From assembly GCA_907165135.1 (NCBI GenBank), contig OU015567.1, forward strand, positions 9,920,001 to 9,984,000: 64,000 nt of DNA, in the 5' to 3' direction. This stretch comes from Oikopleura dioica. Taxonomy: Eukaryota; Animalia; Chordata. Below are positions 1 through 3,259 of the stretch, one piece after another (position 1 is the stretch's first letter; each line of letters begins with the position of its first letter). Made by a program: the position numbers and the translations under genes. Below the pieces are notes generated by a model. It saw nothing but the letters and a program-made list of their open reading frames with translations, ran no database searches and had not been told where the DNA came from.

Positions 1-267
1 CGGAACTGATCTGATTCCATATTTATCTGCTCCGACGGGACACTAGAGTTTAAATATACCCCCAAAAACCCCTTGAAATCTAACCTTATCGATGTCAACT
101 TTTAAGAAAGTAAGATAAGGATATTGAACTGAAAGCTCATCGAATTTCGGAGCCATCTGGCGGCACGGAGCGCACCAGCTCGCTGTAAAGTCGACGACAA
201 ATTTGCGACTGGCATCTAAGGTCCGGCCGAAGAAAGAGTCCTCATCGCAGTCTATCACTCGGCTCAT
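1..267 (-). CDS. Thioredoxin-family protein (5' part; runs off window start)
   Basis: Exon 267-85 encodes VVDFTASWCAPCRQMAPKFDELS..TFLKVDID (WCxPC active site). 42 nt GT-AG intron 84-43, then exon from 42 CPVGADKYGIRSVP. Confidence 0.9.
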
Positions 268-631
268 TCTTCAAATTTAAGTATTCAAATTTGAAGGCTT
301 GAATGTTCATTATGATCATGATTTTGCGAGACAAGAAAAACAAGAAGCATGTCAGAATATTAAATATATTTGATAACAGTTATCGAAAATTGACATTTTT
401 GAAAAACAATCTGTATTGAAAAATTTCCAGTAGTAGGAATAAAATGAAAGCAAAAACGAGTTAACAGGCAGTGCGTTAAAATACAATATGTACATTTTCT
501 AAGATGCGTTAGTTCTTGAGTACTAGAAATATTGAATTTAACCGTATTACGAAGTGAACAAAAAAGGGCAAAATGATAGTTTTCAATGGAAAAAAATAAG
601 GAGATGAGTTATCGAAACAGTCTTTGAAAGT

Positions 632-2878
632 TTAAAGAGAGTCTCTGTCGGAGTCAGAATCGGGTCGTAGTTGTTGATTGAGGGCTTTGATTTTGTTCAA
701 ATTCTGGATTCTGGTAGTCGCCGCGTTCAACATCGGCTCTGGATAATCGACTCCGATGATGGTTCGTGCTTGTTGTTGGACGTCGTTTGGCGCTTTCCAC
801 GGACAATAAATGTATTGCGTCGGAAGATTTTTCAACTCGGGGCAGTAGCGGCGAATGAAGCTACCGTCCGTGTCCCATTTTCGAGCAATTTTGACTGGAT
901 CCATCGCGCGCAGAGGCACTTGATTCGAGAATGCGCTTCCCGTCACCCAGAGAAAGTTCCCAGCATTGAGAGCATAGTCTGCGTCCAGGAGGAATTCTTC
1001 GAAAAGCTGAATGAATTTTTAATCGTACTCACAATCGAGCTCATTTTTACCTGTTGCCCGATTTCCCAGCTGCACCACATTTGCCCAACGGTCAAAAAAG
1101 AAGCCAGGGAGAATCTGGAAATGTGTGTGATCCATCCTTCGCTCTTCATCTGTCGAACGGCAGCATCTATCCACGGGTAACCAGTCATCCCTTCTTTGAA
1201 TTTTTCAATCCACTCGGCTACTCGCTCGTTTTTCGGATCGCTCCACTTGATGTCTCGGCAGATTCGATTGCCTTCGATCTTCGTGAAGTTATTGACAGTG
1301 TAGGCTACGGTATAGAAGAATTCACGGTAAATCATTTGACCCTGGACAGTCGTTCGCATCTTTTCCGGCGCGCCCTGTGCTCCGTGCCAGAATGTTCGAG
1401 GGGACATCGAGCCGAGGTTTATGTAAGGGCTAGAAGTACAAATGTGAATCATGAGATATCTCGATACTTAGGAGAGATGATCAATAATTTAAATTCCTAC
1501 CTCAGGCCCGTTGTCTCCGGCTGTGTCTCGAACCACGGCTCGGTAGTCCCGGGGATTTCGTATTCGTGATCACCAGCTTTGGAAGTACTCGGTCCTTGGT
1601 CGAATTCGAAGAGATTTTTCCTCTCAAGTTTGAATCGCATTCTTTCTAACGCCACGGTCTCTCCCCCTGGCCAGCGAGTCAACGATCTGGGGCATTCGAG
1701 TCCAAGACTGGCCAAAGTAGGGACGCCGTAAATCGCCTGGTGGTTGTCCTCGATTGTAACTGCGCATGATTTGTACATTTCTCCCGTGATTGTCGGAGCC
1801 GGAGGAGCTGGAACGTCCATGTTTCCGACGACAGAGTAGAACTCGTCGAGAGAGAGGGGCACTTGACCATCGTTAGCGTCGATGACTTCTTGAGGATCGT
1901 AAAGTGTGTGTCCGTGGAAGGAGCGAGTGACAATTTCCCGTCGATTGACCTCTTCGAGGATTTCAGCTTCGAGTTGACGGTAAAAGACCTCGGCGTCACG
2001 CATGTAGGTCATTTGGGTGATTTCGTATTCTAGAGTTTTTGGGGTTAGGGCTGATCGTAAGAGACAGTTGCTTACCTCTGCAGAAAGTCTTGATAGCGGC
2101 TCTAGCATTGCCCTTGAGCACGAACAATCTCGTCCCAATTTTCCTCAAACTATCATCCAAATCTTTGAGACTCTCCAAAAGAAATCTAATTCTGTTGTTG
2201 CCGATCCGTTCATTCGCGCGCATCCATTCAAGATCCAAGCAGAAAACACAGTAGACTGCTTCCGAGCTCCGGATCGCTTCCAAGAGAGGTCGGTTGTCAT
2301 GAAGCCTAAAATAGACAGGTAAATAAGTCTCGTTTGAAAGTTCAGATGAGGTCGGTAACGCCCTAAAGCTTACAAGAATAAAAGATGAAAATAAGGGGAT
2401 CTAGTGTCTTAACGTAATCAAAAAAAGTAAGTGGTCCTCAAATTTCAAACTTAATTCTTTCTAAAAGCACTGAATGTTTTCTGATGCATTGTTTTCGCTA
2501 TAAGTTATAGCCTATAACAGACAAAGAAGAATCGATCGTAGATTGTATAATAATGACATGGGTTCGAAAGAAAAGAGTAAAATAAGTTCATGATACTCGA
2601 TTATATAATGTATTTTTTCCACGAGCTAAAATCGATTTTTTTCGCGCTAAACTTCAATTAGCTGACGGTAAAACAAGTTTCGATATGTAATAAAATAATA
2701 TAAGTTTCATATTTAAGGTGTTATGATTTAAAACAATTTATTCCTCTAAAAGATCACTTCTATTGATAACATTTCGGTATTTTCATCTTCAAAAACAGCC
2801 TTGAAATAAGCTTGCAACTCACCTCAATCCTTTTCGGAACCAGTGAAGAGTCCTATGTCTTGTAATGTTTCTCTCCAT
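632..2878 (-). CDS. cry: Cryptochrome/(6-4) photolyase-family protein, divergent (5 exons: 2878-2823, 2305-2076, 2029-1501, 1429-1051, 1006-632; 522 aa)
   Basis: Hand-spliced through GT-AG introns into one open frame (1569 nt): HWFRKGLRLHDN, WPGGETVAL, TGLSPY, YREFF, TGYPWIDA, LLDADYALNAGN, YPEP. All are hallmark motifs of the animal CRY/(6-4) clade. Confidence 0.93.
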
Positions 2879-3259
2879 TTTTCTTATTTTCTTTCTGTTT
2901 TACCGTTTTCAGCTTTTGTCACTTCTGAGCACTTTTTTCGCTCTAGCGCGGCCCACTTTTACGCGCTGGATTTTTTATTTGGTTTTTTGCTCACTTTTTT
3001 GATTGCTTAATTTTCTTAAAAATTTCGGCTTCGAACAGTTCTCGCGAATGGACATTTCAGGCCTGGTTTTATATTGCTCGTTTTTGAAAAATATTGGGTA
3101 AAGATTACATAAGTTCAGCGCAACCTCGGAGCCAATGAAAACGACGGTAGCGCTATATTGGTGATGTTGCGGCGTTAGGGGGGTTGCGAAAATTTCGCGA
3201 AAGCTGTCAGTCGGCTGGAGGTCCGCCAATTGACTCCTTGTCCGGCATTTTGACACCTT

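What the first reader, a model, noticed from the sequence alone, without database searches (positions are those of the whole stretch)
632..2878. Cryptochrome lacking the flavin-proximal Trp and a (6-4) catalytic His
Seen: AGNFLWVT replaces AG(S/N)WMWLS, so TrpA (mouse CRY1 W397, Drosophila W420) is Phe while TrpB, C and D equivalents (MWCSW, IKW) remain. WITHISRF replaces WIHHLARH, so the second catalytic His (H359 equivalent) is Phe. DADW is DADY, and LLWREF is MIYREF. The phosphate-binding loop has a ~15 aa acidic insertion and the protrusion loop is shortened, while the C-terminal CC-like helix is kept. Established: TrpA is needed for canonical FAD photoreduction and both His for (6-4) repair. 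Inference: neither a working (6-4) photolyase nor a standard photoreceptor CRY; perhaps a light-independent regulator or one using an alternative electron path.
Basis: partly seen in the sequence, partly recalled or inferred. Interest (0 to 1): 0.7.

Follow-up and report, generated by a model that had tools for sequence, protein, structure and literature searches.

The report
Larvacean cryptochrome without its flavin-proximal tryptophan
This Oikopleura gene encodes a conserved, expressed cryptochrome that still looks able to hold its flavin but has naturally lost the first tryptophan of the light-driven electron chain and two of three (6-4) repair residues, while a sister copy in the same genome keeps the tryptophan.

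Summary
A five-exon gene on the minus strand (632-2878, 522 codons) encodes a cryptochrome/photolyase-family protein.

- **Residues changed:** TrpA is Phe (TTT, 953-955). The second catalytic His is Phe (1111-1113). The catalytic Tyr is Met. The pocket Trp (LLW) is Tyr.
- **Residues kept:** TrpB, TrpC and TrpD, and the family-invariant flavin-site residues checked.
- **Not an error or pseudogene:** Phe at TrpA recurs in the Norwegian O. dioica orthologue, which metatranscriptome mRNA contigs encode intact, and in three more distant marine relatives. It occurs in none of 175 other relatives. Against the Norwegian copy, pN is 0.084 and pS is 0.78 (saturated).
- **Paralogue:** a sister copy (group B) in the same genome keeps TrpA but has also lost the His and the Tyr.
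- **Placement:** the two larvacean groups form one clade, sister to vertebrate CRY4 (support 97/92). The AU test does not reject a position next to mammalian-type CRY.
- **Experimental analogue:** the engineered TrpA-to-Phe mutant of robin CRY4a binds FAD but forms no lasting radical pair.

My reading: this is not a (6-4) photolyase, and canonical photoreduction is disabled. It is probably a light-independent or unconventionally light-driven regulator, but that function is inferred. It is a new natural variant of a known family, and I found the residue changes in neither Oikopleura paper I searched for them.

The parts
632..2878 (-). Whole coding gene, group A larvacean cryptochrome: 5 exons, 522 codons, stop TAA at 634-632
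   Evidence: Exon ends fall at residues 18/20, 95/97, 271/273 and 399/400 of the orthologue P0153, with no indel at any joint.
2823..2878 (-). Exon 1 (ATG at 2878-2876)
   Evidence: A metatranscriptome contig 95-99% alike joins 2823 to 2305, skipping 517 nt.
2076..2305 (-). Exon 2, N-terminal photolyase alpha/beta domain
   Evidence: PF00875, E 3e-19.
1501..2029 (-). Exon 3, end of the alpha/beta domain, linker and phosphate-binding loop
1512..1616 (-). Enlarged phosphate-binding loop: 35 residues against 20 in mouse CRY1, rich in Asp and Glu
   Evidence: The matching residues 240-266 of P0153 have pLDDT under 50. The loop sequence is not conserved in P0002, P0151 or P0152.
1051..1429 (-). Exon 4, first half of the FAD-binding domain. 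Holds GQMIYREF, IKW (TrpC), GWITHISRF and MWCSW (TrpD, TrpB).
   Evidence: PF03441, E 3e-25.
1327..1329 (-). Tyr (TAC) at the position of mouse CRY1 W292, Drosophila (6-4)PL W302 and robin CRY4a W290
   Evidence: Trp in 164 of 175 relatives, Tyr in none of them. W302 lines the lesion pocket. W290 lies 4 A from the adenine of FAD.
1111..1113 (-). Phe (TTC) at the second catalytic His (mouse CRY1 H359, Drosophila H369)
1123..1128 (-). Thr-His at the HH pair. H354 is Thr; H355 (Drosophila H365) is kept.
632..1006 (-). Exon 5, second half of the FAD-binding domain, C-terminal helix and a short acidic Ser/Asp tail
   Evidence: PF03441, E 4e-29.
953..955 (-). Phe (TTT) at TrpA (mouse CRY1 W397, CRY4 W395, Drosophila CRY W420)
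902..904 (-). Met (ATG) at the catalytic Tyr (Drosophila Y423, mouse CRY1 Y413)
635..727 (-). C-terminal coiled-coil-like helix plus about 10 tail residues. There is no long C-terminal extension.
   Evidence: Helix 494-512 in the model of P0153.

Best explanation
The gene encodes a functional cryptochrome restricted, as far as sampled, to larvacean-type sequences ('group A'). It belongs to the animal CRY/(6-4) photolyase radiation and is most likely sister to vertebrate CRY4.

Shown:
- It keeps the fold.
- It keeps the family-invariant residues of the flavin site: the TGLSPY loop, Q289, R358, D387, D389 and N393.
- It is under strong purifying selection.
- It is transcribed and spliced.

Inferred from residues:
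- It cannot repair (6-4) lesions at a useful rate. Only one of the three catalytic residues is left, and the lesion pocket is rebuilt.
- The normal first step of light activation, electron transfer from TrpA to excited FAD, is removed by Phe. The retained TrpB, TrpC and TrpD are therefore cut off from the flavin.

Inferred, less sure: it acts as a flavin-holding regulatory protein whose output does not depend on Trp-chain photoreduction. One candidate role is a clock or transcription regulator in an animal that has no canonical mammalian-type CRY. Its sister paralogue (group B) has all four Trp and is the likelier light sensor.
For: Family and fold:
- PF00875 and PF03441 are found.
- The AlphaFold model of orthologue P0153 has pLDDT 90.4. 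Foldseek gives TM 0.92-0.93 (normalised to the target) and rmsd 1.9-2.1 A to pigeon CRY4, and similar values to mouse CRY1/CRY2.

Residues:
- TrpA is Phe only in the window, P0153, P0002, P0151 and P0152, and in 0 of 175 other relatives.
- H359 is F or M, Y413 is M or L, W292 is Y.
- Q289, H355, R358, D387, D389, N393 and TrpB, TrpC, TrpD are kept.

Selection: 86.9% amino-acid and 76.4% nucleotide identity to the Norwegian-type coding sequence, with pN 0.084 against pS 0.78, which is saturated.

Expression:
- P0153 is encoded uninterrupted on two metatranscriptome contigs.
- A plankton RNA contig 95-99% alike shows intron 1 spliced out of this lineage's gene.

Phylogeny: the A+B clade has 100/100 support, and with CRY4 97/92.

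Paralogue: group B in the same genome reads AGCWMW and FIHHINRW.

Repertoire: apart from A and B, the PF03441 matches in this genome are one extremely divergent CRY-like gene and three class I CPD-like genes by their motifs. None is a canonical mammalian-type CRY or (6-4) photolyase.

Experimental analogues:
- Robin CRY4a with TrpA changed to Phe binds FAD, has no sub-ps transfer, and shows only a 12 ps side reaction that recombines in 100 ps (PMC10236492).
- In Drosophila (6-4) photolyase, H365N loses repair and H369M has strongly reduced repair. The Xenopus equivalents are inactive (bioRxiv 10.1101/2022.09.10.507404).
Against: - Nothing was measured on this protein: not FAD binding, not photochemistry, not partners.
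- From general knowledge, TrpA mutants of some cryptochromes keep in vivo activity, so loss of in vitro photoreduction need not mean loss of light response.
- Donors near the flavin remain: the W352 equivalent and the new Tyr at 292.
- TrpB, TrpC and TrpD are conserved in every full-length group A sequence. That could mean they still matter, although light-independent mammalian CRYs keep them too.
- Group A shares none of 6 mammalian-type-CRY-specific residues, so a repressor role cannot be read from sequence.
- No Period_C match was found in the genome, but that is a weak test.
- RNA cover of the critical codons in this exact lineage is too thin to count.
Confidence: 0.6

Rival explanations
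1. Group A is still a light sensor. It would use another route, such as electron donation from the W352 equivalent, the Tyr at 292 or a distant hop from TrpB. Alternatively its resting flavin is already reduced in the cell, so the Trp chain is not needed.
For: The checked flavin-site residues and TrpB, TrpC, TrpD are all conserved in group A. The robin TrpA-to-Phe mutant still forms a transient flavin-Trp radical pair through W290 or W350. From general knowledge, in vivo function of Trp-triad mutants has been reported for insect and plant CRYs.
Against: The side-path radical pair in the robin mutant recombines in about 100 ps. The nearer side donor, W290, is Tyr here. No new Trp or Tyr is specific to group A. 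The only two new conserved aromatics, at mouse CRY1 positions 41 and 422, are shared with group B.
Confidence: 0.25
2. It is still a DNA repair enzyme, with weak (6-4) activity or a changed substrate. It would work from FADH- kept reduced in vivo, where the Trp chain is dispensable.
For: H355 (Drosophila H365), the R421 equivalent and the W409 equivalent are kept. Drosophila H369M keeps some activity. The three distant group A orthologues carry exactly Met at that site.
Against: Y423 is Met or Leu, W302 is Tyr, and P292/P293 are replaced. In O. dioica H364 is Thr, and the FLTRGD motif is changed. The Xenopus equivalents of the His mutants are inactive. By their motifs the genome has three separate class I CPD-like photolyase genes.
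Confidence: 0.08
3. It is an artefact or a decaying gene: a sequencing or assembly error at the two codons, or a pseudogene.
For: None beyond thin RNA cover of the critical codons in this lineage.
Against: The same residues appear in independent data sets and lineages. The reading frames are intact and all introns are GT-AG. pN is far below pS. Phe to Trp needs two base changes.
Confidence: 0.01

Closest known systems
Vertebrate CRY4 (pigeon 6PU0, robin CRY4a)
   Same: Best non-larvacean sequence matches are fish CRY4 at 42-44% identity. It is the sister group in the careful tree, 97/92. It gives the lowest rmsd of the solved structures, 1.9-2.1 A. The checked flavin-site residues and TrpB, TrpC, TrpD are shared. 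Both have lost the catalytic Tyr (Phe in CRY4).
   Different: CRY4 keeps TrpA, both His, W290 and the terminal Tyr319. Here these are Phe, (His, Phe), Tyr and Ser. None of 10 vertebrate-CRY4-specific residues is shared. The AU test does not reject a position next to mammalian-type CRY (p 0.128). The stem branch is long, 0.90 changes per site.
Engineered robin CRY4a W395F (the 'WAF' mutant)
   Same: The same single change at the same site, in the nearest family. It binds FAD and blocks the first electron transfer (PMC10236492).
   Different: That is a laboratory mutant in an otherwise intact CRY4. Here the change is natural, fixed in the sampled group A sequences, and comes with loss of W290 and many other core changes.
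Animal (6-4) photolyase (Drosophila 3CVU, fish cry5)
   Same: Same fold and domain pair. H365, Q299, the R421 equivalent and W409 are kept.
   Different: H369 is Phe, Y423 is Met, W302 is Tyr and P293 is Arg. It lies outside the (6-4) photolyase clade.
Mammalian-type (type II) CRY1/CRY2
   Same: Similar structure, TM 0.92-0.94 normalised to the target. A C-terminal coiled-coil-like helix is present. These are light-independent regulators that keep flavin-site residues, which is the working model proposed here.
   Different: Mammalian CRYs keep TrpA and both His. Group A is not inside their clade, shares 0 of 6 of their specific residues, and has no long C-terminal tail.
Larvacean group B paralogue (P0155, O. 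dioica OKI2018_I69 PAR.g8536)
   Same: Sister clade, 48-50% identical. It shares the loss of H359 and Y413, W292 changed to Tyr, and the short tail.
   Different: It keeps TrpA (AGCWMW) and both residues of the HH pair in the O. dioica copy.

Membership tests
Cryptochrome/photolyase superfamily | N-terminal photolyase alpha/beta domain plus FAD-binding helical domain | tested here: met
   PF00875 on exons 2-3 and PF03441 on exons 4-5. The model of the orthologue matches solved CRY structures, TM 0.92-0.94 normalised to the target.
Cryptochrome/photolyase superfamily | Flavin-contact residues (TGLSPY loop, Q289, R358, D387, D389, N393 in mouse CRY1 numbering) | tested here: met
   All are present in the window and in all group A sequences. 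Actual FAD binding was not measured.
Animal (6-4) photolyase | Catalytic His365-His369-Tyr423 (Drosophila numbering) | tested here: not met
   The window reads His, Phe, Met.
Animal (6-4) photolyase | Placement inside the (6-4) photolyase clade | tested here: not met
   It falls in the CRY4 plus mammalian-type CRY clade (99/97), outside fish cry5 and the echinoderm sequences.
CRY4 | Orthology or sister position to vertebrate CRY4 | tested here: inconclusive
   Sister with 97/92 support. The AU test does not reject the alternative (p 0.128), and 0 of 10 CRY4-specific states are shared.
CRY4 | Complete Trp tetrad (W395, W372, W318, W369) with terminal Tyr319 | tested here: not met
   TrpA is Phe. 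TrpB, TrpC and TrpD are present. The Tyr319 position is Ser.
Mammalian-type (type II) CRY | Placement in the type II clade and its specific residues | tested here: not met
   Outside the clade. 0 of 6 specific states are shared.
Mammalian-type (type II) CRY | Light-independent repression of CLOCK:BMAL1 | not testable with these tools
   Needs a reporter assay.
Drosophila-type (type I) CRY | Cys at the flavin N5 position (C416) and a C-terminal tail docked in the pocket | tested here: not met
   Asn at that position. Only about 10 residues follow the last helix. Drosophila CRY scores lower than CRY4 and mouse CRY in both exon searches. No type I CRY sequence was in the tree.

The most novel reading that the evidence does not exclude
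After losing canonical mammalian-type CRY and (6-4) photolyase, larvaceans duplicated a CRY4-like gene and split its roles. Group B kept the full Trp tetrad as the light sensor. Group A fixed a natural TrpA-to-Phe change and became a light-blind flavoprotein regulator, or a sensor with a new electron route. That would be a natural counterpart of the laboratory mutants used to test the radical-pair model, found in a chordate.
Probability: 0.3. Interest if true: 0.75.

Novelty: new variant of a known kind. Interest (0 to 1): 0.55.

Why it matters
The role of the Trp chain in cryptochrome signalling is still argued, mostly from engineered mutants. Here evolution has made the key mutant itself. 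It is held under purifying selection between two deeply diverged O. dioica lineages and fixed in all the group A sequences sampled. A sister copy in the same animal keeps the tryptophan.

Comparing the two proteins would test what the first tryptophan is needed for in a natural setting. Useful comparisons are flavin binding, photoreduction, partners and diel expression.

It also revises the picture of the tunicate light and clock toolkit. One survey could not assign an O. dioica CRY/PL member to a subfamily (PMC9498864). Another work listed CRY2-type candidates (PMC9939569). The protein groups with CRY4 and is not a canonical member of any named class.

Tried and rejected
- **RNA check of the critical codons.** The only species-labelled raw RNA runs were under 90% alike, so from another lineage, and gave 2-7 reads each. 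That is too few. Only intron 1 and the 3' end were confirmed, by a metatranscriptome contig.
- **Searching for this lineage's own annotated protein.** With the orthologue as query, no protein 90% or more identical and of comparable length turned up. I therefore used P0153, 87% identical, as the full-length stand-in.
- **Joined protein.** The joined, spliced protein of the window was never sent to a search tool. Exons were searched one by one by reference, and scripts looked the window's residues up column by column.
- **Diagnostic-site analysis.** This was meant to decide between CRY4 and mammalian-type affinity. The larvacean proteins are too derived, with 'neither' at most sites.
- **AU test.** A clade with mammalian-type CRY was not rejected (p 0.128).
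- **Placing the very divergent chromosome-4 paralogue.** Its branch is 4.2 changes per site and the position is unresolved.
- **Period_C search.** No match in the genome, but the test is weak for a fast-evolving genome searched in six frames. The TIMELESS hits say nothing about a clock.
- **Compensating Trp or Tyr specific to group A.** None was found.
- **Repeats in the long first intron.** None.
- **Literature searches for the His mutants by residue name.** Most returned nothing. One preprint summarises the data.

Full report
**What is there**

Reading the minus strand of 560-3000 gives a five-exon gene with GT-AG introns:

| Exon | Window coordinates | Intron after it |
|---|---|---|
| 1 | 2878-2823 | 517 nt |
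| 2 | 2305-2076 | 46 nt |
| 3 | 2029-1501 | 71 nt |
| 4 | 1429-1051 | 44 nt |
| 5 | 1006-632 | (stop TAA at 634-632) |

The exon translations carry PF00875 (exons 2-3) and PF03441 (exons 4-5).

Exons were searched by reference one at a time. For full-length work I used the orthologue P0153.

The model is sound for two reasons. First, each exon aligns end to end with P0153, which metatranscriptome contigs encode uninterrupted. The joints fall at residues 18/20, 95/97, 271/273 and 399/400 without indels. Second, a plankton RNA contig 95-99% alike skips exactly intron 1.

**The observation**

HMMER alignments of exons 4 and 5 to solved structures are ungapped across the motifs.

| Position (mouse CRY1 numbering) | Other names | Residue here | Codon, window coordinates |
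|---|---|---|---|
| W397 | TrpA | Phe | TTT, 953-955 |
| H354 | | Thr | ACA, 1126-1128 |
| H355 | Drosophila H365 | His (kept) | CAC, 1123-1125 |
| H359 | Drosophila H369 | Phe | TTC, 1111-1113 |
| Y413 | Drosophila Y423 | Met | ATG, 902-904 |
| W292 | Drosophila W302, robin CRY4a W290 | Tyr | TAC, 1327-1329 |
| W374, W320, W371 | TrpB, TrpC, TrpD | Trp (kept) | |
| Q289, R358, D387, D389, N393, W399 | | kept | |

Residues come and codons.

In a MAFFT alignment of 175 other full-length relatives:
- W397 is Trp in 168 and never Phe. The seven exceptions are five gaps, one Pro and one Cys.
- H359 is His in 170.
- H354 is His in all 175.
- W292 is Trp in 164.

DADY is not special. Tyr or Phe occupy that site in 64 of the 175, and mouse CRY2 has Phe.

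The loop claims also hold:
- The phosphate-binding loop has 35 residues against 20. Its counterpart in the P0153 model has pLDDT under 50.
- The protrusion loop is 6 residues shorter.
- The C-terminal helix is there, followed by about 10 acidic and Ser residues.

**Whose genome, and is the gene alive**

The assembly has 64.3 Mb in 19 pieces. It carries the group B gene at 96-98% identity (over most of its length) to a protein named from O. dioica OKI2018_I69, on a contig of the same length as that record. So this is an Okinawa-type Oikopleura dioica.

The orthologue P0153 is an NCBI O. dioica protein from GCA_000209535.1. Against its mRNA-derived coding sequence the window's exons show:
- 86.9% amino-acid identity;
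- 76.4% nucleotide identity;
- pN 0.084;
- pS 0.78, which is saturated.

That means long divergence under strong purifying selection. P0153 carries the same WITHISRF, AGNFLW and MIYREF motifs.

**Relatives**

An exhaustive profile-free search with exon 4 and two word searches with full-length relatives found two larvacean-type groups.

- **Group A** all carry Phe at TrpA.
  - Full-length members are the window, P0153, and P0002, P0151 and P0152 from marine metatranscriptomes (53-54% identical to P0153).
  - The last three read WIHHLCRM, so His at 354 and Met at 359.
  - A fragment, P0001, has Phe at 359 but does not reach TrpA.
- **Group B** keep TrpA (AGCWMW). Members are P0155 from O. dioica, P0154 and P0156. 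They also lack H359 (Trp or Tyr) and Y413 (Leu), and have Tyr at 292.

The window's own genome has group B on contig 1. I read its FIHHINRW and AGCWMW exons directly.

The nearest proteins outside these groups are fish CRY4 at 42-44% identity.

**Tree**

I ran a careful IQ-TREE search (48 rows, 511 columns, LG+C20):

| Grouping | Support (bootstrap/SH-aLRT) |
|---|---|
| Groups A and B together | 100/100, stem length 0.90 |
| That clade with vertebrate CRY4 | 97/92 |
| Both together with mammalian-type CRY | 99/97 |

Fish cry5, the (6-4) photolyase gene as I recall it (named), and echinoderm sequences lie outside.

Two cautions apply. The AU test does not reject a clade with mammalian-type CRY (p 0.128). 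And the larvacean proteins share none of the residues specific to either vertebrate CRY4 or mammalian-type CRY. No type I (Drosophila-type) CRY sequence was in the tree.

I therefore call it CRY4-related, not a CRY4 member.

By parsimony, the loss of H359, Y413 and W292 predates the A/B duplication. The loss of TrpA is specific to group A.

**How it probably works**

*Flavin holding.* The family-invariant flavin-site residues I checked are intact. The predicted fold is confident (pLDDT 90.4) and superposes on pigeon CRY4 at about 2 A. Flavin binding is therefore likely, but this is inferred.

*(6-4) repair.* This is very unlikely. In Drosophila (6-4) photolyase H365N abolishes repair and H369M strongly reduces it. 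The Xenopus equivalents are inactive. Here the second His, the Tyr and two pocket-wall residues are all replaced.

*Photoreduction.* The closest experiment is robin CRY4a W395F. It binds FAD normally and loses the sub-picosecond transfer. It shows only a 12 ps side reaction, attributed to W290 or W350, that recombines within 100 ps. In this protein the W290 equivalent is Tyr, and no new aromatic residue is specific to group A.

So canonical light activation should be disabled. The retained TrpB, TrpC and TrpD would then serve structure, as they may in light-independent mammalian CRYs.

*Working model (inferred).* Group A is a regulator that does not need Trp-chain photoreduction, and group B is the light sensor.

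Apart from A and B, the PF03441 matches in this genome are one extremely divergent CRY-like gene and three genes that look like class I CPD photolyases by their motifs. None is a canonical mammalian-type CRY or (6-4) photolyase.

CLOCK and BMAL are reported as expressed in O. dioica. PER is uncertain.

**What is known already**

- PMC9498864 lists one O. dioica CRY/PL member that could not be assigned, placed between the Drosophila-type and animal-like CRY groups. A search of its text for the Trp triad or tetrad found nothing about this protein.
- PMC9939569 lists two CRY2-type candidates.
- A 2026 preprint mentions an O. dioica 'cry1' expressed from 3.5 hours post fertilisation. I cannot tell which paralogue that is.
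- PMC9498864 and PMC9939569 are the only papers that mention both Oikopleura and photolyase. Five papers mention Oikopleura and cryptochrome, and I read the relevant passages of three. I did not find the residue changes, the two-paralogue structure or the CRY4 affinity described in any of them.

**Verdict**

This is a new natural variant of a known family. It is of moderate to good interest to people working on cryptochrome photochemistry and on tunicate clocks.

Noticed in passing
G000:C1:548318-558361 (L014, L015, L018): The group B paralogue, which keeps TrpA, has about 8 kb between the exon ending near 549575 and the next one near 557592. That is far longer than usual introns here. An earlier first-reader note of this scan describes a transposon-like insert in a cryptochrome gene, which may be this one.
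   Followed up: partly
L003 (G000:C4:10425690-10429124), ORF 1318-3036 minus strand: A single-exon 572-residue CRY-like protein that has lost both catalytic His (WVAPTLRQ) and the DAD flavin motif. It has a long Ser/Glu-rich N-terminal extension. Its tree branch is 4.2 changes per site, and its place inside the CRY4 plus mammalian-type CRY clade is unresolved.
   Followed up: partly
L001 (G000:C2:10.667 Mb), L002 (G000:C2:9.798 Mb), L008 (G000:C1:15.743 Mb): Three intron-bearing genes resemble class I CPD photolyases (motifs such as DWRWG/DWRKG and NNTAGWG). A published survey suspected the O. dioica class I CPD photolyase of being contamination. Here the genes sit on the assembly's large contigs and their reading frames are split like intron-bearing genes.
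   Followed up: no
window 43-267, minus strand: A thioredoxin-like reading frame (WCAPC motif) lies just downstream of the cryptochrome. The Norwegian-type genome has a thioredoxin/DnaJ_C gene in the same position (L011), so local gene order is conserved.
   Followed up: partly
window 2306-2822: Intron 1 is 517 nt, about ten times the length of the other three introns. It has no internal direct or inverted repeats.
   Followed up: yes
window 632-2878: The word search found no protein of this lineage for this gene within the allowed length range, though the group B gene of the Okinawa annotation is there. The gene may be missing or mis-modelled in that annotation.
   Followed up: partly
window 600-2900: The species-labelled RNA runs of 2026 lie mostly under 90% identity to this gene, so they come from another cryptic lineage. 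Only a 2023 marine plankton metatranscriptome holds near-identical pieces.
   Followed up: yes
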